A DNA stretch of 64,000 nt from Octopus bimaculoides (GCF_001194135.2 NC_068982.1:155525442-155589441), one strand, 5' to 3'; numbered from the stretch's first letter, positions 1 through 64,000 are shown. Numbers and translations: made by a program. The notes: generated by a model not told the origin, from the letters alone.

Positions 1-522
1 TCTCCCTCAACTCTCAAGTTTCTGTCCTCAAAGGTAAAGATTACAGTGGATAATGTAGAACCCTATGTCTTGTAAAAGTAAAAAAAAGGGCAGAATGTTT
101 GCAGGTGGAAGCCCTTTAATCATAGGTTTATATGATCCAACTGCGTTAAGGCTAAATATAACGTTGCCTTCCTCAGTGTCTTCATTAACAATTTCTACAC
201 TAACACCTCTTTCATCTATGTTTTCACAAAACAGATTCGGAAATATCTATGTCATAACTGTCTTTAAATGTTCTAGATATTTTCTCTACTAGAAATCTAC
301 AGTTATATGTAACATTTCAGCAGAAACTTCTATGAGGACACTCAATCTACAAGAAATAGCAGCCAAATTTCACACTCACTCCATATCACCTTAAAAATAA
401 GGATAATGAAGCTCTAGATATGCTGAATAAAAGACGGATGACTACAGTTGAAATTTCTTTGATTATATGTATGTTTGATCACAAATGATCAAGGGCTAAC
501 AAGAATCTTGTTAATGTAGTTA

Positions 523-544
523 TGTGTGTGTGTGTGTGTGTGTG
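523..544. repeat. (TG)n microsatellite
   Basis: Direct reading of about 11 TG units. Confidence 0.95.
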
Positions 545-699
545 TATGTTATATACAAGTTGCTATCATTTACAGTCATTTGTCACATTGTAAGCATCAG
601 TTAATATTGCTTCTTAACCATCTACTCTATCACTATTGCTCTGAGTGTCACCATTTCAACTAACAACTGCTATGACAAACAGTTCACCTCTTAAATTGT

Positions 700-1799
700 C
701 ACTGGGGAACAGATTCAATTTTTTGCCTATTGAATTAGATTTGACAATTAGTTCTAGGTAATTTGGGTGTGTTGAGCACACATTTTTACTCGATTTTGCT
801 CTATTAGGTCCTGATTTTGCTTGGGCTTCACTAAGAAAAATAAACATTGTATCAAGCAATGTTTCAAACAAATCTAGCCAACACGAACATCACTTACTGT
901 TGGAGAAGAAAATACCTAGTTAATTCACTTTTAATGACCAGAGATAAAACCATATTTTCTCCTCTATCTAAGAAACTAGGACTCATTAAACAATATGTAA
1001 AAGCTTTAGATACGAACAGCTTTTGTTTCAAATACATAACTTTAAAATTTCCAAGTCTAAGTTATGTAAAAATCAAGGCATAAGTTTTTAATGGTCCACA
1101 AATAAGAACATTAATTAAAGACTGCGATTTTCCTAATGTCATGAACGAATGCGAAAGAATTACGTGGTTCTCATTCGCGGACTTGATAGAAAATTTTTAG
1201 GCAATTATAGGGCAGGTAACTACGAAGAAATCGTAAAAAAAAAATTTTTAAGGGGCTACAAATAGTTAGGTTGCAATATGAGCATAAGGATGCATTTTTT
1301 TTGAATAGCCATCTTGACTAATTTCCAAGTAATTTAGGTGCTGTAAGTGACAAACAAGGGGAGAAATTCCACCAAGATATCAAAATTATGGAGGAATAGT
1401 ACCAAAGATGCTGAGATTACCACATGATGGCTGATTACTGTTGGTGTTTGAAAAGAGATCTGCCATCAACAAGCAAAATACCCTAGAAAGTCTTATAAAA
1501 AAATTTTTTGTCAGTGAAAGCTTCATATCTCTTAATTTTTTTATTTTAAGTATTTCTGTCATTATAATGTAATTTTACAGTAGTTTGAACTGCTTGTATT
1601 TATGAAACTTGAAAATAAATTTGAATACATGACTTAATTTTTTAGTCTTAATTTGAAAAATCTAGAAAATGGCACCTAGGCTGTTGATAAGAATCAGGAC
1701 CTGATAGAGCCAAACTGAGTTGAAATTCATATTCAGTGCACCCAAACTACCTAGAAGCAAGTATCAGATATCATTCAATAAAATATGTGTTCCCCGGTG
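700..1799 (+). mobile_element. Degenerate, internally deleted DNA transposon, most likely Chapaev3-like (CMC/EnSpm superfamily)
   Basis: Imperfect inverted repeats of about 110-120 bp starting CACTGGGGAACA (700) and ending TGTTCCCCGGTG (1799). Internal + strand remnant (about 930-1470, with stops and frameshifts) reads KLGLIKQYVKALD...FPSLSYVKIKA...GPQIRTLIKD...LGCNMSIRMHF..SHLD*FPSNLGAVSDKQGEKFHQDIKIME...MMADYCWCLKRD, a recognisable transposase C-terminus. Superfamily name is from recall of CAC..GTG termini and the H-rich/GE..H motifs. Confidence 0.75.
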
Positions 1800-3189
1800 T
1801 TATTATTAGGATGATGGATTAGTTGAATCATAAGAGCTTCAGACAAAATGCCTTAAACTATTTGTTCTGGCTCTTTACATTCTGGTTTCAAATCCTACCA
1901 AGTTTGACCTTGCCTTGCAGTCTTATACTGAAGTTGATGGTATCCACTAGCACCATCCCCACTTCACCCACCCACAATTTCAGGCCTGATGCCTGTGTTA
2001 GAAGCAATTGTTTCTGAAACCACTATTTGCTTCCCATGTTTATTCTATATTCCACCAAAAGAAGACTAAAAAAAGCCAATAAGAACCACAACATTTAGTC
2101 AGGTCGCTCTTGAGCACTACTGGTAACATGCAACCCAGTACAACCTGTCACATGGTTGGGTCATCAGTGACTAAACTGGCAACCCCATCAAGCTTGCTTG
2201 GTGAGGAGGGCGATTGTCGGACACCCTGCGGGACGAAAAATAAGACCCGTCAAAGGGTGGAAGAACTGCTGTGTAGTCAACGGCCAATTCAACAAATACC
2301 TTGTCGCGGTGAAGTGCCTGTGTGCTCCATTGATCCTGAGAGCTGTGCTGGGGGGAGAGAAATCTTCAGGCAGGTCTTACCAGGCCAGACAGGTCGAAGG
2401 GTAGGAGACAAACAAAACCTTAACGACAATAAATCAAAGCATCAACAGCAGGGTGTGGATTTAGTTATCAGCAGGACCTAACAGATCAGATTCCTGGCTT
2501 TGAACTTGTGGGATGTCATATAGAGGATCTTGAATACAAGACAATGGATAATATTCTTAGTTAGATGGAAACTGCAGGACCACATGGAGCAGTTCCCTGC
2601 GACTCCTATAGTATGCGCAACCAAAACCCCTAAAAGAGGGCATCCTATGGGACGACCTAAATAAGATGAGATGATTAAGTCACTATCTTATCAGTTTAGG
2701 ATATTTGCTCTACTTTGCAAAGAAATAGTTGCAGGATTAGTGTTAACAATTAGTGTGCTGGTATTAGCTAAGATAATAATGTACATCACTAAAATATCGT
2801 TAACATAGCACCAAACACAGCTTAACACAGAATCAACATAGCCTAAGCATAGCATTAACTCTTTTATCATATTTCTGTTGAAATACATTGCCTGAAAATA
2901 ATTAAAAAATGGAGTGAAATAACTTTATCCTTATTAAGCTGGTGTTTGGAACATATATTATCATGAATTTTGATGCAAGGTTGTAATTTAGATCACTTTA
3001 AAACAGCAAGCTTGTATTAAAGAACAAGAGTGATCTCAGGCAGGATGGTATGAAAGTAGTCCTTATAGCATTCATCAGCATAAGTTTATACTGAATATGT
3101 TTCTTTCGTAACTTTTGTAATGCTTCCAATTGTTATCTTTGTAGTCCATTATATTAGCATCACTCGTGTTTACTACCAAATCAATTATT

Positions 3190-3215
3190 TTTTTGTCCTC
3201 ATTCTCTACTTCCAG
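3190..3215 (+). promoter_or_regulatory. 3' splice acceptor of the giant exon
   Basis: Polypyrimidine tract TTTTTTGTCCTCATTCTCTACTTCCAG ending at AG 3214-3215, just upstream of the long open frame. The exon starts in phase 1 (xAT GCA TCA CAG CCT...). Confidence 0.75.
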
Positions 3216-6200
3216 ATGCATCACAGCCTGCACCAGAGACGCTTATTCATTCTACCACAAAACAATCAGTGAAGATGCCAATTATATCCAGTATTACACC
3301 TGAACTTCAGAAAATATGCCGGCTGACTATGGATAACAACTCTTTGTCACCATCTCAGTGTTCAGCACTGGCAGTAACAACCCAGTCAGCATTATCAGTT
3401 AACAAGACAGCCACTTTGCCACAAGCTTCAGCCATCAATCCACCAGATCCGTCCACTGCAACATTTGACAAGACCTCTGTGTTGCCAACATCACAAAATC
3501 TTGAAATGCAGTTGTCTCCTGCTTCAGACAAACCGACGAGAGATTTATTTGCTCTAAATAATATACAGGTTCCAAATTATTTGTCATTACCTGCCTTAAC
3601 ATCATCACCTCCAACTTCTGCATTAAATATACAATCGTCTTCCATTTCAAAACTTCAACCAAGGTTCTGTCCTAGTTCAGAAGCTTCTGTTTTAATGTCT
3701 TCATCTAAATCTGATGTATCATCGTCACCTTTAACTTCTTCTGTTACTGACACTTCTGAAGTAGCTAACACATTGCTACCTCAGTCAGTCACTCCAAACC
3801 AAACCTATTCTTCTAAGCAAACTGTTGTCTCTAAAGCTATTTCTCCAGTATCATCTACTCATTTAACTCCATCTTCTTCTCACTCTGTTCCTTTTAGCTC
3901 TGACACACAAACTTCACTACCCAGTACATTAGGATCTAGTACCTCACAAACTACTCCTCACTCTCTAAATAGTCCCCAGGTTTGCACTGCTACTTCAAGC
4001 AAATACACTCTCCCTCATCTAGATATATCGCTTGCACCAGTAAAACACCAAACTCCCATTTCTTCATTAGATCCCAAGATTTTGGTCCCGTGTTTATCTA
4101 CAAATATTATTACTCCAACTCTTACTGAAACATCAACCAATATCTCCTCATCAAACCCAAAGGTTTCAGTATCAACTTTATCTCCAAATACCAAACTTGT
4201 TTCTTCTACTCCAATTCCACTTGGTCCAGACTCATCAAAAAGTACCCCACTACTAGTTTCTAATTCATCATCAGACACAATGTCTGAAGTACCTAGTGTC
4301 AGGGTTATTCCATCTGCCACTAAAATTCCAGAACTTAGCTCATCACCTAATACTAAGGCTCCAGTATCCAACTCCTCAACATTCACTTCCTCTTCTGCTA
4401 CTGATACTTCAACTCTTACCTCTTCCTCTACTATGATCCCATCATCTCTAGCGGCCAGCTCCTCATCTACTACCAGTACTCTAATACCAAGTTCATTACA
4501 TATTAATGATAATAGGGCATCTGACATCCTCCCTGTTATCAAGACTTCAGTTTCCAGTTCTTTGTCTTCTACTGAAACTGCAGTTGCCAACACTTCTATT
4601 TCTGGTTCCTTGCCTGCCACTGACACTCCAAAATCGTGTTCGTCATCTGAAACCTCATCTTCTAGTTCATTTCATAAGCAAAATTTTGATGCTCAGAATA
4701 GCTCCCTAGGACTCAAAACCATACTGCAAACTGATAGTTTATCTCATTCTCTCGCTCCTGCAAAGATATTACCTGCTGTTTCTGAAAACAATTTGATGGT
4801 TTCTCGTTCAGTTACTCCCACTATCTCAACTAATTTTTCTCCTCTTCTTAAGAACTCAACTAATAATTCTGCTGCCAGTTCTCTGTCAGTTATCAATAAT
4901 CACTTGGCTGATTCTTCTGGTACATCATCCCTTGTTCCCATTGTTTTGGTTAGTCCTGTTTCTGCATCAAGTTCTAACACCAAAGCATCCAGTGGTAGTT
5001 TTGTACAACCCCCAACTCCTAGTCCTTCAGATCTCAACATTTCCACATCTAATTCTTCAAGTTCCAATGTCAACATTATGAGTAAGTCACCTCCAACTTC
5101 CAGTCCTACTGTGACTGAAAAGACTCCAGTTACCATCTGTGTTCCAACTGAAAGAGATCCCCAACCTATCTCTACTTCTGTATCACCCATTTTTACTTCT
5201 CCTACTGCTCCTTTGAAGATATCTACTCCTATTCCCAGCTCCACTTTTACATTGAATTCTTCTGATCTACAAACTACAAAAAGAAGTACATCTGATACCA
5301 AGACATTAGTTACTGACTTGTCTTCATCTTCATGTACACCCAATGTATCTGAATCATTGCCATTAACCTCTGGTATTACTGCTTCTAGTTCATTGTCAAC
5401 ATCTAAGACTTCAATTCCCAGTTCATCTGATCCACAACTTTTGTCACCTGGACTAAAAACTATTAGTTCAAGTGCTGATACAAAGCCACTAGCACTTAAT
5501 GATCCTAATTCTATGAAATCAAGCACAAGTGGTAGTTTCACAACCTCATCAGACAGCAAATCTCTTGGCACCAAAACCTCAGCTCCTGACTTGACTGATA
5601 GTCCTAAAATCTTGGCTTCCAGCTCTATCAATAGCCCCAAGATCTTGGTGCCCATTTCTTCTGATGGTCCCGAGATGTTGGCTTCTAGCTCTTCTGATAA
5701 CTGTAAGACCTTAGCACCCACCTTCGCTGATACCTCTATCACAACAGCTTCCAGCTCTACTCATAATCCTAGAACTTCAACTGATTGTCCAAAAACAGAT
5801 AATTCTAAGATGCTACCTACCAGTTTGACTACTAATACCACTTCTACTTTACCTAAAGCACTTGACTCAGTTTCTTCTGTCACCAAACTGTCTTGTACAG
5901 TTTCATCCTCCACTCCCAACTCAGTAAAATCTACCATTCTCAAAACACTGCCACCTAACAGCACATCTATTAAAACAAAATCACTTGATACCTCTGGACC
6001 TCAGAAACCAATGACTTCCAGTGACTCATTCTCTATGACAACACCAGTCATATCAGTTTCTGTGACACCAACACCCAGCTCTACAGATCCCCCTAAGCCT
6101 ACTTATTCTCCTTGCACATCATCTCCTACTTCTACAGCTAACCCTCAAACTCTGGATCTCAGCTGTACATCTGTTCCCTCTAACTCTACATCATCCCCCA

Positions 6201-9200
6201 AGGCACCAGCTTCTCACTCTACATTTGTCTCCAAAGCTCCAGTACCTAGTTCTACATCTTCCCCTAACATACCAGTCTCCAGCTCTACATCTGTCCCCAA
6301 AACTCAATCACTCACCTCAACAGCTGTCTCTAAAACACCAGCCCCCATTTCTACCATTTCCTCCAAAACTCCAGCACCTAGTTCTACTACTACCCCCAGG
6401 ACACCTGACTCTAGTTCCACATCTGTCCCCAAAATGTTAGCACCTGGTTCTACAACTCCCCTCAACACACCCATCCCTAAAACTCCAACACTCAGTTCTA
6501 CACCTATCTCCAAAACAACAACACTCACTCCTACAGCCACCTCTAATTCATCTGCTCCTAACTCTGTTGCTTCTCCAGCACCCAGTGTTAAAGCCACATC
6601 TACAGCACCAACCCCCAACTCTGCATCTCTCCCAAAAATTACAGCACCTAGCACTACCGCTTCTCCCAGCTCTACATCTACCCCCAATTCTACAGTTATC
6701 CCTAAGATACCAACCACCAGCTCTATATCTCTCTCAAAAATTTCAGCAACTATTACTACCGCTACCCCAAACTCTTCACCTGTTCTCAAAACTCCAGTAC
6801 CCTGTTCTACAGCTACTCCTAAGACGCCAGTTCCTAGTTCTACATCTGTTCCTAAAATCCCAACAAGCATCTCTGCAGTTGCCTCCAAGACACCAGCCCC
6901 CACCACATCTTCCTTGAAGACATCACACACAGTCACTACATCTTCCTCTAAGGCAGCAGCACCCACAGTGACAACTGTCCCTAAAACATCAACAACTACA
7001 AAAATATCTACAATCAAAACTCAAGTGTCTTTCTCCAAGACACCAGCCTCCACTACTGTAGATCCCCCAAAGACACCAGCCTCCACCATAACAGATGTCC
7101 CGAAAACACCAGCCTCCACCACTATAGATGCTGCAAAGACACCATCCTCCACCACAACAGATGTCCTAAAGACACCAGTCTCTACTGCAGATGTCCCAAA
7201 GACACCAGCCTCCACCACCATAGATGTCCCAAAAACACCAGCTTCCACTACTACAGATGCCTCAAAGACAGCAGCCTCTACCACAACAGACACCCCAAGA
7301 ATGCTAACACCCACAACTTCATCTGCTCTCAAAACAACAGTGCTCACCTCTACATCTTCCTCCAAGTCTTTAACTCTTAACTCTACATCTAACACTTCAG
7401 AAACTACCACTACAACTCTTTCTATGATTCCACTACCCAGTTCAAACTCTCAACACAGTACTCCAACATCAATTTCTACTTGTATTCAAAAGAATTTAGC
7501 ATCTAGCTCTACATCTTCCCCACAGGTCCCTTCACATAGCACTAATTCTACCCACAAGGCTTCACCAGCCAGTATTGTTTCTACAACAAAGACCTTGGCT
7601 GCCAATACTGCATCTGCACTCCAGATCAAACCAATAGCACCCACTTCTACAACTACCCCCAAGCCACCAGCAGCCACCTCTACAACTACCCCCAAGACAC
7701 CAGCAGCTGCCTNNNNNNNNNNNNNNNNNNNNNNNNNNNNNNNNNNNNNNNNNNNNNNNNNNNNNNNNNNNNNNNNNNNNNNNNNNNNNNNNNNNNNNNN
7801 NNNNNNNNNNNNNNNNNNNNNNNNNNNNNNNNNNNNNNNNNNNNNNNNNNNNNNNNNNNNNNNNNNNNNNNNNNNNNNNNNNNTCTACAACTACCCCCAA
7901 GCCACCAGCAGCCACCTCTACAACTACCCCCAAGCCACCAGCAGCCACCTCTACAACTACCCCCAAGACACCAGCAGCTGCCTCTACAACTACCCCCAAG
8001 ACACCAGCGCCCCCTTCTACAACTACTTCCAAAACATCAACACCCATTTCTACAGCTACTTCCAAGACATCAGGATCTATCTCTACCACTACCCCCAAGA
8101 CACCAGCACCCACTTCTACATCTACCCCCAAAACACCAGCATTCACCTCTACAACTACCCCCAAAACACCAGCACCCACTTCTACAACTAATCCTAAGAC
8201 ACCAGCAACTACTTCTACTATTACAAACAAAACACCAGTAATCACTTCTACATCTTCCCCCAACACATCAGCATCCATTTCTACAGCTGCACCCAAGACA
8301 GCCATCCCAAGCATTACAGCTGTCTCTAAGACACCGGCAATCAGCTCTACAATTGCTTCTAAGTTACCAGCACCCAGCCCTGCATCTGCCTCTAAAACAC
8401 CAGTGCTCACCTCTACAATTATTCCGAAGTCACAAGCCCCTGTCTCTGCAGCTGCCTCTAAATCAGCAGCACCCAACTCAACCTCTTCCCCCAATACACC
8501 AGCACCCACCTCTACTTCTGCTCCAAAGACACCAGCACCCACTTCTACAACTACTCCCAATACACAGGCCTTCAGTTCTGTATCTTCCCCTAAGAGCCTG
8601 GCTCCCAGCTCTACCTCTTCTCCCAAGACTCAAGCACCAACTTCTACAACTACCCACAAGACACAAACACCTAGCTCTTCTTCAACCTTACAAACATCAT
8701 CACCCAATTCATCTTCATCTACAACACCAACACCCATTTCTACAATACCAGCACCCACTTCTACAACTACCCACAACACATCATCACCAACTTCTACATG
8801 TACCCCCCACCTTCCATCACCAAACTCACCACCTACTCCTAGCACACCATCACCTAGCTCTTCAACTCTCAAAACCTCAACACCCAGCTCTTCTTCGGCC
8901 CCCAAGACACCAGCATTCAGTTCTACAGATACCCCCAAAATACTAGCATCCAACTCTACAGCTAAATCCATATCACCAACCACTACAGCTGTTTCTAGGG
9001 CCCCAGCTCTCAGCTCAACATCTGCTCCCAAGACACCAGAACCCACCTCTTCAGCTATCACCAAGGCACCAGCCCCCAGTTCCACCTCTACCAAGGCACC
9101 AGCCCCCAGTTCCACCTCTACCAAGGCACCAGCCCCNNNNNNNNNNNNNNNNNNNNNNNNNNNNNNNNNNNNNNNNNNNNNNNNNNNNNNNNNNNNNNNN

Positions 9201-12200
9201 NNNNNNNNNNNNNNNNNNNNNNNNNNNNNNNNNNNNNNNNNNNNNNNNNNNNNNNNNNNNNNNNNNNNNNNNNNNNNNNNNNNNNNNNNNNNNNNNNNNN
9301 NNNNNNNNNNNNNNNNNNNNNNNNNNNNNNNNNNNNNNNNNNNNNNNNNNNNNNNNNNNNNNNNNNNNNNNNNNNNNNNNNNNNNNNNNNNNNNNNNNNN
9401 NNNNNNNNNNNNNNNNNNNNNNNNNNNNNNNNNNNNNNNNNNNNNNNNNNNNNNNNNNNNNNNNNNNNNNNNNNNNNNNNNNNNNNNNNNNNNNNNNNNN
9501 NNNNNNNNNNNNNNNNNNNNNNNNNNNNNNNNNNNNNNNNNNNNNNNNNNNNNNNNNNNNNNNNNNNNNNNNNNNNNNNNNNNNNNNNNNNNNNNNNNNN
9601 NNNNNNNNNNNNNNNNNNNNNNNNNNNNNNNNNNNNNNNNNNNNNNNNNNNNNNNNNNNNNNNNNNNNNNNNNNNNNNNNNNNNNNNNNNNNNNNNNNNN
9701 NNNNNNNNNNNNNNNNNNNNNNNNNNNNNNNNNNNNNNNNNNNNNNNNNNNNNNNNNNNNNNNNNNNNNNNNNNNNNNNNNNNNNNNAAGGCACCTGCCC
9801 CCAGTTCTACAACTGCTCCCAAGGCACCTGCCCCCAGTTCTACAACTGCTCCCAAGGCACCTACCCCCAGTTCTACAACTGCTCCCAAGCCACCAGCACC
9901 CAGTTCTACAACTACTCTCAAGGCACCAGCCCCCAGTTCTACATCTAGCACCAAAACACCAGCCCCCAATTCTGCAACTACTCCCAAGACACCAGCCCCC
10001 AGTTCCACATCTAACATGAAAACATCAACCCCAAATTCTACATCTACTCCCAAGGCACCAACTACTACCACTATTTCTACCAAAACACCAACTCCCAGTT
10101 CTGCAACCACTCCCAAAGTTCCAGCACGTAGTTCTACTACTACTACTAGCAAAACACCAACCCCCAGTTCTACATCTAGTACCAAAACACCAGTAAGTAT
10201 TACAACAACCCCCAAGACGCCAGCACCCAAGATAGCTACAGTCACCTCTACAACAACTTCTAAAGCTTCATCACTTAGCTGTACCTCTTCTCCTGCAGTA
10301 CCCAGTTCTACTTCAACCTCCAACACACTCCTATCCAAGTCTCCCCTCAAATCTACTGTGGCCCTTTCCAATACTACATCCAAATCTCTGGCACCCAGCT
10401 CTGCCTCTCCTTCCTCTACCACTATTACTGTTGCATCCAAGACAACAGTGCCTACTTCTACCACTGCTTCTAAGACAACAGTTTCTACTTCTACCACAAC
10501 TCCTAAGACTACAGTTCCCATTTCTACCACTACTTCTAAGATCATAACTCCTATTTCTACCACTACTTCTAAAACTACAACTCCTACCACTACTTCTAAG
10601 ACTACAGCTTCTACCTCTATCACTACTTCTACCATTGCTTCTCCTTCCTCTGCTATTGCATCGAAAACAACAGTGCCTACTTCTAAGGCTACAGCTCCTA
10701 TTTCTACTATTGCTTCCAAGACTACAACTACTACCACCACTGCTAAGACAACACCTCCTACTTCTACCGTCACTGCTAAGACTACAGCTCCTACTTCTAA
10801 GACAACACCTGCTACTTCTACCGCTGCTTCTAAGACAACAACTCCTACTTCTACCACTGCTTCTAAGACAACAACTCCTATTTCTACCACTGCTTCTAAG
10901 CCAACACCACCTACTTCTACCACTGCTTCTAAGACAACAGCTCCTACTTCTACCACTGCTTCTAAGACAACACCCCCTACTTCTACCACTGCTTCTAAGC
11001 CAACACCCCCTACTTCTACCACTGCTTCTAAGACAACACCCCCTACTTCTACCACTGCTTCTAAGACAACACCCCCTACTTCTACCATTGCTTCTAAGAC
11101 AACACCCCCTACTTCTACCACTGCTTCTAAGACAACAGCTCCTACTTCTACCACTGCTTCTAAGACAACACCNNNNNNNNNNNNNNNNNNNNNNNNNNNN
11201 NNNNNNNNNNNNNNNNNNNNNNNNNNNNNNNNNNNNNNNNNNNNNNNNNNNNNNNNNNNNNNNNNNNNNNNNNNNNNNNACCTACTTCTACCACTGCTTC
11301 TAAGACAACAGCTCCTACTTCTACCACTGCTTCTAAGACAACACCCCCTGCTTCTAGCACTGCTTCTAAGACAACAACTCTTACTTCTACCATTGCTTCT
11401 AAGACAACACCCCCTACTTCTACCACTGCTTCTAAGACAACACCCCCTACTTCTACCACTGCTTCTAAGACAACAGCTCCTACTTCTACCACTGCTTCTA
11501 AGACNNNNNNNNNNCTTCTAAGACAACAGCTCCTACTTCTACCACTGCTTCTAAGACAACAACTCTTACTTCTACCATTGCTTCTAAGACAACAACCCCT
11601 ACTTCTACCACTGCTTCTAAGACAACAGCTCCTACTTCTACCACTGCTTCTAAGACAACACCTCCTACTTCTACCACTGCTTCTAAGACTACAGCTTCTT
11701 CCTCTAGCACTGCAGCCAAGACTACCACTGCTCCCAATTGTAATACTGTACCAAAGACCTCAACATCCAGTTCTACCATTATCACTAAAACTTCAACACC
11801 TTCCTCTGTCTCTGCTCTTAAATCTCCAATGCCCAAAGTTGTTTTAACTGGTTCCAAACCAGCAATACCTAGCATCATTTCTGATCCCAAAACAACAGTT
11901 TCCAGTTCTAAATTTGATGTGAAAAGTTCAATGTTGAGCTCTACATCTGGCAGTGAAGCAGCAACGCTGAGCAGCACAAGCAGTGACAAGACACTTGAGC
12001 CTAATGTGACATCTGGTATCAAAAGAAAAGCTCCTAGCTCCATTTCTAATGTCAAGAGACCAGCACTTAGCTCTTCTAGTGTTGAAAAGAAGCCTGCGTC
12101 TAGCTCTACCTCTAAGATAGCTTCCAGTTTTATCAAAGATTCTGAGGCATCTCCCATATCAACTCCTGAGGTTACCCTAATTTCTGGTTCAAAATCTTCA

Positions 12201-15200
12201 CCAGTTACTCCTACCTCTAGTCTGAATACTCCAGCTACCAATTCTACTAATGGCATTAAAATTCTACCTCGTAGTTCTGCTACTGGTGCTCTAGCTTCTA
12301 GTTCTGCTGTTGTGACTGACACTCCAGCTTCCAGTTCTATTGAAACTGACACTGCAGCTTCTAGTTCTGCTATTGATGCCCCAGCTTCCAGTTCTGCTAC
12401 AGCTAGTGACACTCCAGTTTCTAGTTCCGCTACTGGTTTTGACACTCCTTCTCTTAGTTCTACAGTCAGTGTTGATACTACAGATGCAAATTCTACTTTG
12501 AGGAACAGCTTCCCAAGTGGTGAGAAAAGTTCTCGTGTCTCTTCTCTTCCATGTCAACCATCAACTGACAACTCTTCTCTGAACAAAAGTCCATCTTCAG
12601 GTAATTTTGGGCCAAGTTCCTCTTCAGTTCCCCCATCTGTCTCTGTTAGCATTTTTGATACCAAAATGCCTCACTCTTCTGTTTCATTAACTCCCATAAC
12701 AAGCTCCTCCTCTAGTATCAACACCACACTTTCATCAGATATAATATCATCACCAAACTCTGTCTCTACAGAACTTGCATCATCCACCAGTTCAAAAATG
12801 TCTGCTGTTGTTGTCTCCTGTCAGAATACTTCATCCTCCTCCTCTTCAAATGTAAATTCTGAAATCTCTGACCCTAAATCTCCCTCTTCTACCTTCTCTT
12901 CTAACTCCATATCCCCAGCACCTATTTCATCATCTGTTCAGTCATCTTCAGAATTAGCTTCCTCATCAAATCAAGTTGTAATTGAGTCTGATTCACCTTC
13001 TCAATCTAAATTAGGTAATCACTCCTCCAAATGCACGTCTAGCTTACCTTCCATTAAGTCCCCAAGTAGGATGTCTCCTATAGAAACTAAGTCATTAACT
13101 TCATCTGCTCCCTCCTCTAGTGTTTCAACATCATCAGATTCTGTTACTTCATCTCATTGTGCCAAAGATTTAGTTCTTTCGTCTGAAGTTAAATCAGCCC
13201 CGTCACCAAATAACCCAACTTTAATGTCATCAACTTCTGTCACTACCAACGAACCAACCCCATCCTCTGTTCTTTCCAAAGAGTTTGTTCCATCTTCATC
13301 TGTTTCATCTGAGACAGCCCCATCTTCATCTGCTTATTCTAAGAAACCAAAAGCCACTCCAGTAGCAAGCTCTAAGACATCAGTTTCATCTTCTACTAAA
13401 AGAATACTACCATCATCTTCTAATAATATAACACAAACTCCCAGTTGTAGTCCTGTTGAGTCTTCAGACTCACTCCACTCTGCTAGTAAACCATCAAGGT
13501 CTTTGTCACCATCATTTGATGCCAAATCCCCTGTGCTTTCTTCTTTGTCTAGTGTCAAGTTGCCTGAGCCTTCATCATCATCATCATCATCTGGTGCTAA
13601 ACCACCAGGTCCATCTTCATCATCATCATCATCGTCATCATCTGACACTGATTTGCTAGGACTTTCATCATCATCATCATCATCATCTGACAGCAAGCTT
13701 CCAACACTGTCATCATCTAATGACATTGTACCAACAACAGTATCACAATCAATTGAATGTAAACTTGATTCACCATCAGTGACACCAATATCTTCTACTT
13801 TCCCTCCATCTCCAACGCCTTGTTCATCTACAAATCACAGATCTCCTCCACACAGTCAAAAATTGCCATCTCCTTCATCATCAACTGACTTTTCAGATTC
13901 TAATGTAATTACCCCATCATCTAATAAATCTGATTTGCCAATTGTGGCATCATCAGCTTCTGAATCAGTGTCCCTATCAGCATCAATTGATGAAGACTTG
14001 ATGATGTCTTCAGAACTGTCATCTAATTTAGTTGAATCAACTAGTAATCAGAACACTTCTTCACATCCTGTTGAACCCATTCACACTACATCTTCCTCTT
14101 CTCTAACAGAAGATGCCCATTTACATTCATCATTACCTTCTGAGTCCTCATGTTCTTCTCTAGAACATCCTGAGCAGTCATCAGCAACTCCTATTTCATC
14201 ATCGGTACAAGACCCTATCAAGGTGCCTGTGTCAGCCTCCTCCTCCTCTTCATCATCATCATCATCATCTGCAGAAGTATCCAACTCTCAGTCATCAGCC
14301 CCAGTTTCCTGTGTCAAAGAGTCACCAAAATTAATTAACAGTGCTGCTGACTCTCTATCTCCTACTTTAGACACTGCTTCTCCTTCCAACATGGTACAAC
14401 AGACATCTGTTGCTTCAACTCCTTGCCTGTCTAGCAAATTGCCTTCTAAGTTAAAATCTTGTTCATCAGCTGAATCCTCATCATCCTCCTCCTCATCATC
14501 ATCATCATCATTATCAACATCAGATTTAGTCATTTCTGTAAACAGTAGTTCTAACATTCCAGTTTCACACAAAGTTTGCAACTCTCCTAATGTGGATACA
14601 GGCCTTAAACCCTCCCTTTGTGAAGATGAACAAAATGCTTTGGAAAGTTTAGTGAACAGTAAAACTGAAAGTGATTTGACTAAGGAAATGACAGAGAATT
14701 TAGAACCTGAAAACACCAGTACTAGTCAGAAATCAGAAGAGGATGCACAACTACCTGGTACTTGTGTTGAGGAGAAACCTAGTGAAAATAATACTGAAAT
14801 CAAAACAACTTCTGTGAGTTCTGACACTCTTGGAGCTGAACAATTGATTTCCAATACTAGAAGTGATGTGAATGAAGGCCAACCAGTTAGTTGCAGTGAT
14901 GTTGCTAGCCAGCCATCAGATTTTAAATGCGAGTTGGCTAATTCTGATGACACTGAAGTTAGCAGATTATTATGTGGTGGTAAAAAACCTGTTGGTGATG
15001 TGACAGATGCTCCTCAGAAGTCTTGTGACATTAAATGCGACTTGTCTGTAACAGATGACATTAAAACTGATGAGAATTTCAATTCACAGACTCTGTTTGA
15101 AGACACTGATCGACCAGTAATGGAATCTGATGTAAAAGAGGATAAAAATTTGGAAAGTGGAGAGAAAGAATGTGCCTCATCAGAGTCTCAAACTGAAATA

Positions 15201-17201
15201 AAAACTGAAAAATCTACTTCTATTAAGACTTACAGTTCATCCAAGGTTGATATTAAGACAGATTCAAAAGTGAAGTGTGAGGTAGAGGAGAAAAGTGAGG
15301 TTGAAATTTCTTACAATAGTCAGTCCAAATCAACTATTAAGGATGACAATTCTGACGTTTGCAAGAATGAGAAACAAGAGCAAGTAACCTGTGAGGAAGA
15401 TGACTCGCAAAGTTTTAATAAAAGCAGTAAATGTGAAGAGCTAGCATTACAACTGCAGGAAAATAGTTGCCATTCAGAAGAATCGACAGACTCTGGCAGT
15501 CGAAGGCTACGTGGAAGACCCCGAAAGACCAGTACAGAGACTGTCTCAACTGAACAAATGAAAACCCAACTATTGAACCCTGGAAATATTATAAACTTAC
15601 GCCTTCGCCGAGACCGTCCATCCGTAAAGAATGGGAAATGTAAACACTGTTGCTGCAAAAAACGCTGTCAGGCCAGCTGTGTTCAGAACAAGTGTATGGG
15701 TTGTATTTTAGATGGCAATTCAATATGTCGTTGTAGTTTAAAAGAAAGCTTGATGAAGAATATTCAAAGTATAGCTTTGTCAGTTAATACAATGTGCATG
15801 AATTGTCATGGAAAGAACAAAAGATCTGTTCGGGCTTGCAAGCGGAAACGCTCACCAAGTCCACAACCAAACAAACGACGTAGTGTTCTGCAAAGTCAAG
15901 TAAAACCCTCCACTACAACAAATCAAAAATCATCCAAAAATTCCTCAAAAGTATCTAGAACAAACTTCAAAACCAAACTGACTACAACTCCTCACAAAAC
16001 AATTGCCAAATCACCCCACAAAAAATCCCTAACAAAAACCCCTTCTAAAAAAGTAATTGAAGTTGAATTGAAAAAAATATCTCGAGAACCTTCTAAGCAA
16101 AAGGAACCCAGATGTAAATTAAAGAAAAAGCTAAGTGTCAATCTTTTGAAAGAAAACCCTGTTGTCTCTCTGAAGCAAATGAGCTCATTAGAGTCTCTGT
16201 CGGTTAGCCAGACAAGTAAAAAGGAGGATAGCACAAAGCATGTATCGACAAGGCGTTCGCTGAGGAGTAGAAAGTCTCTTGATGAAAGTACACCAGTATT
16301 GCAACAGATGCGCCGATCAAAGTCGGAACAAAAGCTTGATTCGAATAATGACAGTGCATCAAAATACCAAATTGATTTGGCTCTTACAGACAATATGAAT
16401 GATACAAAGATCAATTCTAAACTTTCACAAGACCATCTCAGGACAAATAGCAAAAGCAATGCAGCTCAGCCATGCTGTAGTACAGCAGATGATTGTTGTA
16501 GTACATGTGCTGACAACTTTAATAAAAAATTTGTAGATAATCGTGCTCTAAAAGAACTGCGGCAGCGTGTTAAACTTGGACCTTTTAAATGGGACTTGGA
16601 GGAATCAGATACTGGTGGACGAGCTCACACGAATGACGAATCTAATAAATCTAATAATGCAAATACTGTGTCAACTTGCAACACCAGTGTATCTAATACA
16701 AGCAGTAGTAGTAGCTCTTCTAAGGTATCAGAAAATACCTCACAAGTATCCCAGTTAACTCCCTCCTCTTCTGCATCATCATCAAGTAGTATGGATGATG
16801 AACTTGTGAAAACATCCATGACCCCACCAATCAGGACTTACTCTAGAACCCAGTCCCCAACTTCTCGGATCCGTGTTGGCCGAACATACAGTAAAGCATC
16901 TGACTATCAGGCCCTTCCCCCTGGGGTAATACCCATTGTAGACTGTCTGCGAGCATCATCACGCAGTTCAGCCAGTCACCTCTGTGACATGCCTCGTGTA
17001 CATGTAGTACGAGTAGATAAAAAGGGCAACATGTTTGAAACTCGAGAACCTTACCCTCTGCCCAGAACACCTGTGGACACTGACATAAATCGTAGTGTAC
17101 TTGATGAGGAAAAAGTTTCTGGCCAAAGGTGGAAACTGCAAAGAACTAAAATGAAAACAGATGGCTATCCATTTAGTTTTAAGAAAACACGAATTCAATA
17201 A
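3216..17201 (+). CDS. Giant terminal exon of an uncharacterised Ser/Thr/Pro/Lys-rich protein (mucin-like repeats; C-terminal AT-hook, Cys cluster and basic region)
   Basis: Each of the five sequenced blocks between N-gaps has one uninterrupted S/T/P-rich frame, and the frame changes only across gaps. ORF-track entries 3269, 8403, 10016 and 11829 are pieces of it. Stop TAA at 17199-17201. About 13,050 non-N coding nt. No ATG or signal peptide identified; upstream exons probably lie outside the window. Confidence 0.85.
7030..11700 (+). repeat. Coding tandem repeat array, mostly 33-nt units (11 aa) with some 30-nt units
   Basis: Successive unit types: STTTDVPKTPA, STTTPKPPAAT, STTTPKTPAPT, SSTSTKAPAP (30 nt), SSTTAPKAPAP, STTASKTTPPT (e.g. 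CCTACTTCTACCACTGCTTCTAAGACAACACCC). Confidence 0.95.
7713..11514. other. Four assembly gaps inside the coding repeat (7713-7883, 9137-9787, 11173-11279, 11505-11514)
   Basis: N runs of 171, 651, 107 and 10 nt, each flanked by near-identical repeat units. Confidence 0.99.
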
Positions 17202-17370: not shown

Positions 17371-17551
17371 AATAAATAAGTTTTGAAATCTTGTTAAATT
17401 ACTAAATTGCTTTTGATAGTTTAATTTGATGAGAGAAACTATCTGGGGATAATAGTCAGGCCATCTTTAATTTATTGTCAGTAAAGTTTGACTACCTTCT
17501 TTACTTGAAATACACTAATGATTGCCAACCACTCAGCTTTCTTCTTACTAC

Positions 17552-31544: not shown

Positions 31545-31707
31545 GGCGCAGGAGTGGCTGTGTGGTAAGTAGCTTGCTTACCAACCACATGGTTCCGGGT
31601 TCATTCCTACTGCGTGGCACCTTGGGCAAGTGTCTACTATAGCCTCAGGCCGACCAAAGCCTTGAGTGGATTTGGTAGACGGAAACTGAAAGCCCGTCGT
31701 ATATATG

Positions 31708-33357: not shown

Positions 33358-63586
<30,229 letters not shown>

Positions 63587-64000
63587 ATTGAAATGGTTGA
63601 TTGTAGAGTTTTTAAAGAGAGAGAGTGTGTGAGAAAGAAACAGATATTTCCCCGAAACACAAATATAAAGACTGCTCAGTCGATACTATTACTATTATTG
63701 GCAACTACTGTAGTTGTTTCAATGAGACAGTAGTGATGGTCACTAACTACGACGAGAGTAGAAAAGACAGAGGGAGGTAACAGCGGCGACAATATATCCA
63801 ATGTCGACGACTTCTCTCTCCAAATGGACGACGTGTCTCGTTCAGAATGACAGCCTCGCTTTCGATCTGACCAACCTGTTTTATTAACCTTCTCTAGAGA
63901 AGGTTTCCACTCCTCTTACAAAGGTGGTAACTAGTTGTTGTTAGGTACGCCGCATGGCGGACAGTCACAGTTTTAGTACTAATATTTATCCCTGCTTAAA

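What the first reader, a model, noticed from the sequence alone, without database searches (positions are those of the whole stretch)
3216..17201. A single ~14-kb coding exon encoding more than 4,300 aa of an apparently uncharacterised protein
Seen: one acceptor at 3215, an open S/T/P-rich frame in every sequenced block, frame changes only at N-gaps, and one stop at 17199. Exons this size are rare, and the assembly splits this one into four ORFs. Composition would lead pipelines to call it mucin-like, but no transmembrane segment or secreted domain (vWD, SEA, cystine knot) is visible and the C-terminus looks nuclear. Inference: a giant intrinsically disordered nuclear or chromatin protein, loosely analogous in architecture (not homology) to Ki-67, whose repeats also lie in one giant exon.
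Basis: partly seen in the sequence, partly recalled or inferred. Interest (0 to 1): 0.75.

Follow-up and report, generated by a model that had tools for sequence, protein, structure and literature searches.

The report
Giant last exon of Rlf-like gene
This is a real coding exon of about 14 kb, and it is the back end of a nuclear zinc-finger gene of the Rlf/ZNF292 family rather than a mucin; it is so long because a lysine-containing Thr/Ser/Pro 11-residue repeat has multiplied inside it, which is also why the assembly breaks there.

Summary
From a good acceptor at 3215/3216 to TAA at 17199-17201 there is one stop-free frame in every sequenced block: 4,344 codons and 13,047 sequenced nt. All four N-gaps lie inside 33-bp (11-aa) coding tandem arrays. 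At each gap the repeat register predicts a missing length that restores the frame, so the "four ORFs" come from arbitrary gap sizes.

The nuclear reading is supported and can be made sharper. The last 572 aa are 58.5% identical to the end of a 3,405-aa protein (P0002) encoded by one uninterrupted 10.25-kb exon in another species. That protein has five widely spaced C2H2/C2HC-like fingers and a basic (NLS-like) run. With its upstream exons spliced, it also has a Pfam TPR_Rlf domain (51 bits, cut-off 27). A third species has the finger exon alone, ending in a phase-1 donor that matches the window's phase-1 acceptor.

The window exon carries:
- a basic PTS array,
- an acidic patch,
- an AT hook,
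- a conserved cluster of 13 Cys and 2 His,
- a tail under strong purifying selection (dN/dS about 0.04).

It has no transmembrane segment, no mucin domain and no known fold. I read it as an ordinary but unusually inflated family member. Interest is modest.

The parts
1..33 (+). Candidate 3' end of the upstream (zinc-finger) exon, ending ...CTCAAAG|GTAAAG. This is a tentative assignment.
   Evidence: There is a consensus donor at 33/34. Read in phase 1, base G33 plus AT at 3216-3217 gives Asp, which fits the acceptor's phase. The homologous exon in L004 ends ...SQELPVK + G|GTAAGA in the same phase, against SQVSVLK + G|GTAAAG here. The evidence is weak: 33 nt is open in all three frames, and the similarity is only S-Q....K.
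34..3215 (+). Intron. It holds a roughly 1.05-kb element with 89-nt inverted terminal repeats at 728-816 and 1692-1780.
   Evidence: The frame is closed upstream of 3158. A polypyrimidine tract plus cag ends at 3215.
3216..6216 (+). Start of the giant exon: a non-repetitive Ser/Thr/Pro-rich region that appears disordered and is nearly neutral in charge.
   Evidence: 999 codons with no stop against 45 expected. S+T+P is 39-60%, and net charge is +4. No Pfam family at E <= 1. No C2H2 motif.
6217..11713 (+). Coding tandem arrays with a 33-bp (11-aa) unit containing one near-invariant Lys, such as TPAPTSTTTPK and TTAPTSTTASK. The arrays are interrupted by four N-gaps at 7713-7883, 9137-9787, 11173-11279 and 11505-11514.
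   Evidence: TRF arrays, with every period a multiple of 3. 122 Lys-delimited units are sequenced, 80 of them exactly 11 aa. Net charge is +112 with almost no acidic residues. The youngest array (10794-11713) is 90-94% identical between units. Repeat register and frame are continuous across every gap.
11714..14660 (+). Non-repetitive Ser-rich region that appears disordered (S up to 40%), including poly-Ser runs.
   Evidence: It is contiguous in one ORF with both the last repeats and the C-terminus (block 11517-17198, no stops). Net charge is -10.
14661..15480 (+). Acidic patch (D+E 23%, net charge -33).
   Evidence: P0002 has a patch of the same sign at the same relative place (residues 2301-2830, net -29).
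15501..15527 (+). AT-hook motif RRLRGRPRK.
   Evidence: Found by regular expression. It is conserved as RRPRGRPRK in L003. The Pfam AT_hook match in P0002 is below threshold: 10.1 bits against a cut-off of 17.4.
15636..15812 (+). Conserved Cys-rich cluster, CxHCCCx3Cx3Cx4Cx2Cx7CxC...Cx2CH. I presume it binds zinc.
   Evidence: By my reading of alignment A3, all 13 Cys and 2 His are conserved between the window and L003, and the 3' part is also conserved in L001. No Pfam match and no PDB match. AlphaFold2 confidence is low.
15840..16238 (+). Basic Lys/Arg-rich stretch with the NLS-like sequence KRKRSPSP.
   Evidence: K+R is 23%. KR[KR]RSPSP is conserved in L003 and L001.
16239..16631 (+). Two conserved linear blocks: TRRsLRSRKSlDEsTPV..q.RRSKSEQKLDS, and KKF..NRALKELRQRVKLGPFKWDLEES.TGGRAH.
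   Evidence: The blocks are invariant in the window, P0001 and P0002. The second block is predicted helical, but pLDDT is only 50-59.
16791..17198 (+). Highly conserved C-terminal module: DDEL..TPPIRTYSRTQSP.SRIRVGRTYSKASDYQALPPGV ... RWKLQR.KMKTD.YPFSFKK.RIQ.
   Evidence: The last 135 codons are 84% identical to L003 while synonymous sites are near saturation (pS 0.73, dN/dS 0.04). No Pfam or PDB match.
17199..17201 (+). TAA stop codon. AATAAA signals follow near 17373, 17620 and 17720.
   Evidence: The stop is at the same residue in P0001 and P0002.

Best explanation
Positions 3216-17201 are the 3'-terminal coding exon of the local orthologue of an Rlf/ZNF292-like nuclear zinc-finger gene.

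The N-terminal TPR_Rlf domain and the widely spaced fingers are encoded upstream, mostly outside the window. Window positions 1-33 may be the last bases of the finger exon.

The exon encodes, in order:
- a very long disordered linker;
- an acidic patch;
- an AT hook;
- a presumed zinc-binding Cys cluster;
- a basic NLS-like stretch;
- a strongly conserved C-terminal interaction module.

In this lineage the linker has been inflated about three-fold by in-frame expansion of a 33-bp minisatellite. This produced more than 120 copies of an 11-residue Thr/Ser/Pro unit with one Lys each. The near-identical young copies are what broke the assembly.

Inferred mechanism. The protein is targeted to DNA by the fingers and the AT hook. 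The C-terminal module recruits partners. The polycationic, TP/SP-rich array acts as a multivalent, low-affinity chromatin-contacting spacer, and its binding could be tuned by repeat number and by Ser/Thr modification.

What is shown: the exon, its continuity, the orthology, the family of the orthologue, and the selection on the tail. What is inferred: nuclear location and every step of the mechanism.
For: ORF and gap continuity.

Orthology: an exhaustive HMMER search of 1.84 billion representative proteins with the C-terminal profile found only P0002 (813 bits) and P0001. tblastn of P0002 on the window gives residues 2834-3405 matching 15501-17198 at 58.5% identity, E = 2e-173.

Structure of the orthologous gene: P0002 is one uninterrupted ORF on a 426-kb genomic contig (L003 10001-20218, with an acceptor at 9967/9968). 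It contains five spaced C2H2/C2HC-like fingers and the basic run KRKRRR.

Family: a spliced model of the L003 upstream exons plus the start of the giant exon hits PF25580 TPR_Rlf at 51.3 bits (cut-off 27), E = 1.2e-13. A cruder model had already given 30.2 bits.

Finger exon in a third species: P0003/L004 shows the finger exon bounded by the same acceptor and by a phase-1 donor. This matches the window's phase-1 acceptor.

Selection: dN/dS is 0.04 over the last 135 codons.

Against a membrane or secreted product: no transmembrane segment and no mucin domain.

Charge pattern: +112 in the repeats, -33 in the acidic patch and +60 in the C-terminal region. The acidic patch and basic end are mirrored in P0002, whose non-repetitive linker is near neutral.

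Family precedent from the literature: the last exon of ZNF292 is its largest and encodes all 16 fingers (PMC12329236). Rlf has 16 widely spaced fingers, binds DNA and interacts with chromatin proteins (PMC4381397).

Functional precedent for nuclear P/S/T repeats: the MDC1 PST region is a multivalent nucleosome binder, tuned by repeat number and by CDK1 phosphorylation of TP sites (PMC13548061).
Against: - The window itself contains no finger and no TPR_Rlf sequence. The link to the Rlf family rests entirely on orthology of the C-terminal 572 aa, plus the matching intron phase.
- The disordered regions of the window and P0002 do not align.
- The C-terminal module found no vertebrate RLF or ZNF292 in the exhaustive search. 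Family membership is therefore carried only by the N-terminal domain of the orthologue.
- The fingers of P0002 and P0003 score below Pfam's cut-offs. There are 5 of them, against 16 in RLF and ZNF292.
- AlphaFold2 gave no confident fold for either end: pLDDT 37.6 and 44.1.
- No transcript evidence exists for this species.
- 939 nt of the exon are unread.
- Differences between repeat units show no third-position excess. Selection seems to act on composition and frame rather than on the exact peptide.
Confidence: 0.8

Rival explanations
1. It is a secreted or membrane-tethered mucin. On this view the PTS tandem array is an O-glycosylated extracellular domain, and the nuclear-looking C-terminus is a coincidence.
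For: S+T+P reaches 65-75% across roughly 1,500 sequenced residues of tandem repeat. Lys-containing Thr-rich repeats do occur in secreted glue and mucin proteins (from my own knowledge, not tested here). The true N-terminus is outside the window, so a signal peptide cannot be excluded directly.
Against: - No vWD, SEA, cystine-knot or any other Pfam domain at E <= 1.
- No transmembrane segment; the highest Kyte-Doolittle 19-mer score is 1.19.
- The array is in one ORF with an AT hook, KRKR and a conserved basic tail.
- The orthologue carries zinc fingers, a TPR_Rlf domain and no tandem array at all in the same exon. The repeat is therefore an add-on to a protein of a nuclear zinc-finger family.
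- The N-terminal exon modelled in L003 starts MEYFAEEDP, with no hydrophobic leader. This may not be the first exon.
Confidence: 0.04
2. The open frame through 6.2-11.7 kb is a by-product of low-complexity DNA. On this view the minisatellite is really an intron, or is alternatively spliced out, and lies between two coding exons at about 3216-6200 and 11700-17198.
For: The C-rich repeats are poor in stops, and long ORFs also appear on the minus strand there, for example 9118-11154. Differences between units show no third-codon-position excess. The orthologue manages without the array. The gaps are unread.
Against: - Every TRF period is a multiple of 3.
- In each larger repeat block exactly one frame is stop-free, while the others have 2-27 stops. 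That frame is the one running in from the unique flanks on both sides (blocks 3218-7712 and 11517-17198).
- 12-17 stops per block are expected from composition.
- The arrays grade gradually into the unique Ser/Thr/Pro-rich flanks.
- Register and frame agree across all four gaps.
Confidence: 0.08
3. It is a lineage-specific paralogue or a truncated derivative that has lost the zinc-finger and TPR_Rlf part. Translation would start at an upstream exon or at ATG 3275, giving a purely disordered protein with an AT hook.
For: No finger is present in the window. An in-frame ATG exists at 3275. The evidence that positions 1-33 are a finger-exon end is weak.
Against: - The acceptor at 3215 has a strong polypyrimidine tract, and its phase matches the donor phase of the L004 finger exon.
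- Only one homologue per species was found in the searches.
- The tail is under strong purifying selection, as expected of the functional orthologue.
Confidence: 0.08

Closest known systems
RLF / ZNF292 / ZNF654 (Rlf-like widely spaced zinc-finger proteins; Pfam PF25580 TPR_Rlf)
   Same: The orthologue L003/P0002 has the TPR_Rlf domain, encoded by small phase-0 exons. A giant exon follows, with widely spaced fingers and long disordered stretches. This is the layout reported for ZNF292, which has 8 exons, the last being the largest and encoding all fingers (PMC12329236). Rlf has 16 widely spaced fingers and is a DNA-binding chromatin modifier (PMC4381397).
   Different: - Only 5 recognisable fingers, against 16, and several are C2HC-like and below Pfam's thresholds.
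- The C-terminal AT hook, Cys cluster and conserved tail retrieved no vertebrate family member in an exhaustive search.
- In the window's lineage the giant exon appears to be split by an intron.
- The downstream part carries more than 120 PTS 11-mers that the orthologue lacks.
MDC1 PST-repeat region
   Same: It is a nuclear protein with a tandem Pro/Ser/Thr repeat region that acts as a multivalent chromatin (nucleosome) tether. Binding scales with repeat number and is weakened by phosphorylation of TP motifs (PMC13548061, PMC6858307). The window's array is likewise basic (+112) and holds most of the exon's 199 [ST]P sites.
   Different: There is no sequence homology. The unit is 11 aa here, against about 41 aa in MDC1 (my own knowledge). 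No FHA or BRCT domain was found. Only 5 full CDK-type [ST]Px[KR] sites are present. The function here is untested.
Ki-67
   Same: It is a very large, mostly disordered, positively charged nuclear protein whose repeats sit in one large exon. Its surfactant role on mitotic chromosomes is discussed in terms of protein size and charge rather than of a specific fold (PMC8786303, PMC9106583, seen only as titles and abstracts; the detail is from my own knowledge).
   Different: No FHA domain, PP1-binding motif, 122-aa Ki-67 repeat or LR domain was detected. The orthologue has a quite different domain context, with TPR_Rlf and fingers.
Mucins (PTS-domain glycoproteins)
   Same: Both have the same composition and a tandem PTS array. 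Automated pipelines would probably label this exon mucin-like.
   Different: No signal peptide is seen, and there is no transmembrane segment or vWD, SEA or CK domain. The array is fused in one ORF to an AT hook and NLS-like sequence. The orthologue is a zinc-finger protein.

Membership tests
Rlf-like zinc-finger proteins (RLF/ZNF292/ZNF654) | N-terminal TPR_Rlf domain (PF25580) | not testable with these tools
   This part of the gene lies upstream of the window. In the orthologous gene L003 the feature was tested and met: 51.3 bits against a cut-off of 27, E = 1.2e-13, on a spliced model of exons 7159-7359, 7637-7784, 8275-8417 and 9968 onward.
Rlf-like zinc-finger proteins (RLF/ZNF292/ZNF654) | Multiple widely spaced C2H2 zinc fingers | tested here: inconclusive
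   There are none in the window exon. P0002 has five spaced C2H2/C2HC-like motifs at residues 584, 637, 784, 1099 and 1141, and A2 shows these stretches invariant in P0003. Pfam zf-C2H2 and CCHC_ZFPM2 hits fall below the cut-offs, the best being 25.2 bits against 27.
Rlf-like zinc-finger proteins (RLF/ZNF292/ZNF654) | Very large 3'-terminal coding exon | tested here: met
   The exon at 3216-17201 contains the stop codon. The L003 exon is 10.25 kb. The last exon of ZNF292 is its largest (PMC12329236).
Rlf-like zinc-finger proteins (RLF/ZNF292/ZNF654) | Orthology of the window exon to a gene that carries the family's domain | tested here: met
   58.5% identity over 572 aa, E = 2e-173, with the same stop position.
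Mucins | PTS-rich tandem repeat domain | tested here: met
   S+T+P is 65-75% in 33-bp arrays.
Mucins | Signal peptide, or a transmembrane anchor | tested here: inconclusive
   No transmembrane-like segment exists in 4,344 residues; the highest Kyte-Doolittle 19-mer score is 1.19. The true N-terminus is outside the window. The N-terminal exon modelled in L003 (MEYFAEEDP...) has no hydrophobic leader, but it may not be the first exon.
Mucins | vWD, SEA, cystine-knot or other extracellular domains | tested here: not met
   No Pfam family at E <= 1 in three stretches covering most of the non-repetitive sequence, 3158-7712 and 11517-17198. None at E <= 10 in the C-terminal pieces, apart from one chance-level hit.
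AT-hook DNA-binding proteins | An R-G-R-P core flanked by basic residues | tested here: met
   RRLRGRPRK at 15501-15527, conserved in L003. The Pfam AT_hook model is too short to be significant: 10.1 bits against 17.4 in P0002.
Ki-67 | FHA domain, PP1-binding motif, 122-aa Ki-67 repeats, LR domain | tested here: not met
   No Pfam hits. The repeat unit is 11 aa.

The most novel reading that the evidence does not exclude
The Lys-punctuated Thr/Ser/Pro 11-mer array has at least 1,500 sequenced residues and a net charge of about +112. It could be a functional, repeat-number-tunable chromatin tether or chromosome-coating brush, switchable by phosphorylation or O-GlcNAc, that arose independently on an Rlf-type DNA-binding scaffold. 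That would make it a convergent invertebrate counterpart of the MDC1 PST region or of the Ki-67 brush. The conserved block of AT hook, 13-Cys cluster and tail would then be an undescribed chromatin-reading or partner-binding module.
Probability: 0.15. Interest if true: 0.6.

Novelty: new member of a known kind. Interest (0 to 1): 0.33.

Why it matters
- Annotation. Composition-based pipelines would call this exon a mucin, and the gaps split it into four false ORFs. Placing it in the Rlf/ZNF292 family prevents both errors.
- Exon size. At about 14 kb it is a very large coding exon. Human internal exons average 147 nt, and only 1,115 exceed 1 kb (PMC3467050); this one, however, is a terminal exon, where size is less constrained.
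- Gene evolution. An in-frame minisatellite appears to have tripled a disordered linker, while the flanking modules stay under strong constraint. The comparison also shows an intron that is present in two lineages and absent in a third, within what is otherwise one giant exon.
- An uncharacterised module. The conserved C-terminal module has no Pfam or PDB counterpart, and it sits in a family linked in mammals to epigenetic maintenance and neurodevelopment. That makes it a modest lead.

None of this overturns current understanding.

Tried and rejected
- Pfam on three stretches covering most of the non-repetitive sequence and on isolated C-terminal blocks: nothing.
- PDB sequence searches with the C-terminal 633 aa, the AT-hook/Cys region and the N-terminal profile: nothing meaningful. 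There were only chance uL4 hits at E of about 0.7.
- All three word-indexed protein searches returned one relative each. The profile search of the finger region found only its own member.
- AlphaFold2 on the C-terminal 573 aa (pLDDT 37.6) and on the first 212 aa of P0003 (pLDDT 44.1) gave no usable model. No Foldseek search was run, because matches to such models would be meaningless.
- Aligning the window's disordered region to P0002 gave only composition-driven alignments, which I rejected as evidence.
- A test for third-codon-position excess between repeat units showed no excess. It is therefore not used as evidence of coding.
- An exact look-up of the 1,790-aa window ORF in public assemblies found no record.
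- Searching papers for the run and assembly accessions, to name the organisms, found nothing relevant.
- UBZ4-type and CXXC-type readings of the fingers and the Cys cluster were considered from memory. No tool supported them, so they are not claimed.

Full report
**1. The observation**

The + strand between 3158 and 17198 is open apart from the four N-gaps. Each sequenced block has one stop-free frame, with one exception: the 225-nt pure-repeat block 11280-11504 has two. The other frames carry 2-231 stops.

A textbook acceptor (ttttttgtcctcattctctacttccag|AT) lies at 3215/3216, in intron phase 1. A TAA stop lies at 17199-17201, followed by AATAAA signals.

The exon is 13,986 nt as assembled. 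Of this, 13,047 nt are sequenced, giving 4,344 codons. The two non-repetitive parts alone have 999 and 1,828 codons without a stop. From base composition, 45 and 104 stops would be expected. The longest open frame in the remaining 47 kb of the window is 165 aa. This is a coding exon, not a chance ORF. The ORF listing does split it into four pieces.

**2. The gaps**

The middle of the exon (6217-11713) consists of tandem arrays with a 33-bp unit, and all four gaps fall inside these arrays.

For each gap I extended the last unit before the gap periodically and found the shift that best matches the sequence after the gap. The best shifts were 32, 19, 0 and 23 bases (mod 33), with identities of 0.91, 0.67, 0.97 and 0.95. 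Modulo 3 these are 2, 1, 0 and 2.

I then calculated the missing lengths needed to join the open frames on either side. This uses the block phases 1, 2, 1, 0, 2 and the nominal gap lengths 171, 651, 107, 10. The answer is also 2, 1, 0 and 2. The "frame changes at N-gaps" are therefore what arbitrary gap sizes in a collapsed coding minisatellite would produce.

All 31 TRF rows inside the ORF have periods divisible by three. The youngest array (10794-11713) is 90-94% identical between copies, which explains why the assembly broke there. What lies in the gaps is nevertheless unread.

**3. What the exon encodes**

Overall composition is S 24%, T 17%, P 11% and K 7%. There is no 19-residue window above Kyte-Doolittle 1.19, so no transmembrane segment.

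The regions, in order:

| Coordinates | Content |
|---|---|
| 3216-6216 | near-neutral, non-repetitive S/T/P-rich stretch |
| 6217-11713 | 122 sequenced Lys-delimited units, 80 of them exactly 11 aa (consensus TPAPTSTTTPK, then TTAPTSTTASK), net charge +112, almost no acidic residues |
| 11714-14660 | Ser-rich stretch |
| 14661-15480 | acidic patch, net charge -33 |
| 15501-15527 | AT hook RRLRGRPRK |
| 15636-15812 | cluster of 13 Cys and 2 His |
| 15840 onward | KRKRSPSP and a Lys/Arg-rich stretch |
| 16239-16631 | two short conserved blocks |
| 16791-17198 | conserved tail |

Pfam finds nothing at E <= 1 in any part. PDB sequence searches find nothing.

**4. Relatives**

A word-indexed search with the last 633 aa found a single protein, P0001. 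It has 359 aa, is 61% identical, comes from two sequencing-run assemblies, and ends at the same RIQ*.

An exhaustive HMMER search of 1.84 billion representative proteins, using a profile of the window's C-terminus plus P0001, found only one more relative. This is P0002, with 3,405 aa and 813 bits. Its residues 2834-3405 align to window 15501-17198 at 58.5% identity, E = 2e-173.

P0002 is encoded by one uninterrupted ORF on a 426-kb genomic contig (L003 10001-20218). The exon really starts at an acceptor at 9967/9968. TRF finds no tandem repeat within it.

Its first ~1,300 residues carry five widely spaced C2H2/C2HC-like fingers and a KRKRRR run. Then come an S/T-rich linker, an acidic region, and the same AT hook, Cys cluster and tail.

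A search with that finger region found P0003 (1,476 aa, 48% identity). It lies on a 4.95-kb genomic contig, L004, from a third species. There the exon begins at the same acceptor (tttcag|GCTGGAGA) but ends at a donor (AAAAG|GTAAGA) in phase 1. That is the phase the window's acceptor requires.

The window's first 33 bases end in ...CTCAAAG|GTAAAG and could be the equivalent exon end. This is only a weak indication.

**5. Family**

Upstream of the L003 giant exon there are three small open stretches with clean phase-0 splice sites (7159-7359, 7637-7784, 8275-8417). Spliced to the start of the giant exon, they hit Pfam PF25580, "Zinc finger protein Rlf-like, TPR repeats". The score is 51.3 bits against a gathering cut-off of 27, with E = 1.2e-13. 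A cruder join had already given 30.2 bits.

The orthologue is therefore a member of the RLF/ZNF292/ZNF654 family. Two points from the literature fit this:
- ZNF292 has 8 exons, and the last is the largest and encodes all 16 fingers (PMC12329236).
- Rlf has 16 widely spaced fingers, binds DNA, associates with chromatin proteins, and maintains methylation states at CpG-island shores and enhancers (PMC4381397).

The gene layout in L003 is the same: small exons for the TPR-like domain, then one giant terminal exon with spaced fingers and long disordered stretches. In the window's lineage, and in that of L004, the giant exon appears to be split by an intron. The window holds the downstream part.

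**6. Selection and structure**

Between the window and L003, synonymous sites are at or near saturation (pS 0.73-0.88). Yet the last 135 codons are 84% identical, with dN/dS of about 0.04. The tail is therefore functional.

AlphaFold2 with the three available sequences gave mean pLDDT 37.6 for the C-terminal 573 aa. Only two helices and a hairpin were hinted at. It gave 44.1 for the first 212 aa of P0003. I did not run fold searches on such models. The conserved C-terminal blocks may be linear interaction motifs, or a zinc-dependent fold that cannot be modelled from so shallow an alignment.

**7. How it most likely works**

*Shown:* one terminal coding exon; continuity compatible across all gaps; orthology to an Rlf-like finger protein; a lineage-specific in-frame minisatellite; a constrained tail.

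*Inferred:*
- The protein is nuclear, given the fingers and TPR_Rlf domain in the orthologue and the AT hook and NLS-like runs here.
- It is targeted to DNA by the fingers and the AT hook.
- The tail recruits partners.
- The polycationic array, which holds most of the exon's 199 [ST]P sites, behaves as a multivalent, modifiable chromatin-contacting spacer.

The best-studied precedent for the last point is the PST region of MDC1. It binds nucleosomes multivalently, its binding scales with repeat number, and CDK1 phosphorylation of TP motifs weakens it (PMC13548061, PMC6858307). This is an analogy, not homology.

**8. Rivals**

*A true mucin (about 4%).* This is contradicted by the absence of any extracellular domain or membrane segment, and above all by the orthologue's architecture.

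*The array is intronic or spliced out (about 8%).* This is contradicted by the periods divisible by three, by the single open frame that continues from both unique flanks, and by the gap arithmetic. Only cDNA can exclude it.

*A truncated paralogue without fingers (about 8%).* This cannot be excluded from the window alone.

**9. Novelty and verdict**

What is there is a new member of a known kind, the Rlf/ZNF292-type zinc-finger genes with a giant last exon. It stands out for a repeat-inflated linker and for a C-terminal module with no Pfam or PDB match.

The organism was not identified with the tools available. Interest is modest, at about 0.33. It would be higher only if the array proved to be a functional chromatin tether.

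Noticed in passing
window 44647-63685, minus strand: These are exons of a ribophorin I (OST1/RPN1) gene. Pfam Ribophorin_I hits fall at 44647-44931 (90 bits), 45481-45918 (87 bits) and 63191-63685 (24.6 bits; this piece contains a signal-peptide-like [20 protein letters not shown]). The gene is the downstream neighbour and converges on the giant exon.
   Followed up: partly
window 34579-34929, minus strand: An open frame of 117 aa that reads like a coiled coil. It has a sub-threshold Pfam hit to DNA_repr_REX1B (21 bits against a cut-off of 24, E = 5e-4). It may be an exon of a REX1BD-like gene.
   Followed up: partly
window 728-816 and 1692-1780: Inverted repeats of 89 nt, 75% complementary, bracket about 875 nt inside the intron upstream of the giant exon. 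It looks like a non-autonomous DNA transposon.
   Followed up: partly
window 25.3-25.7, 30.4-31.1, 38.9-39.3 and 50.7-51.0 kb: A dispersed repeat recurs in both orientations; its translated frames read ...[21 protein letters not shown].... Separately, short pieces at both ends of contig L004 match other window sites (for example 41889-41996 and 31557-31635) at 75-79% identity, so that repeat family is shared between species.
   Followed up: no
window 48724-49110 (+) and 54032-55862 (-): Transposon remnants: a Tc1/mariner-type HTH_Tnp_Tc3_2 domain (59 bits), and a weak reverse-transcriptase (RVT_1) hit at 54338-54622 with further open frames around it.
   Followed up: partly
window 2083-2478 (+): A relatively GC-rich open frame of 132 aa inside the intron. 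It has no Pfam hit and no other copy in the window. Its nature is unknown.
   Followed up: partly
L001:380-425, and the same in L002: In the homologue from runs SRR27666086 and SRR27666074, the reading frame shifts just after a 13-A run. There is a 2-nt gap relative to L003 in a poorly conserved stretch. The cause may be an error in homopolymer length or a real indel. The same called protein (P0001) was found in both runs.
   Followed up: partly
L003 9968-20218 compared with L004 and the window: One lineage has the finger region and the disordered/C-terminal region in a single 10.25-kb exon. Two other lineages have a phase-1 intron between them. This is either an intron gain or an intron loss inside a giant exon.
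   Followed up: partly
window 7562-8626, 9118-11154 and other minus-strand ORFs: Long minus-strand ORFs (up to 678 aa) overlap the repeat arrays. They are by-products of stop-poor, strongly C-skewed repeats (GC skew about -0.6), not genes.
   Followed up: yes
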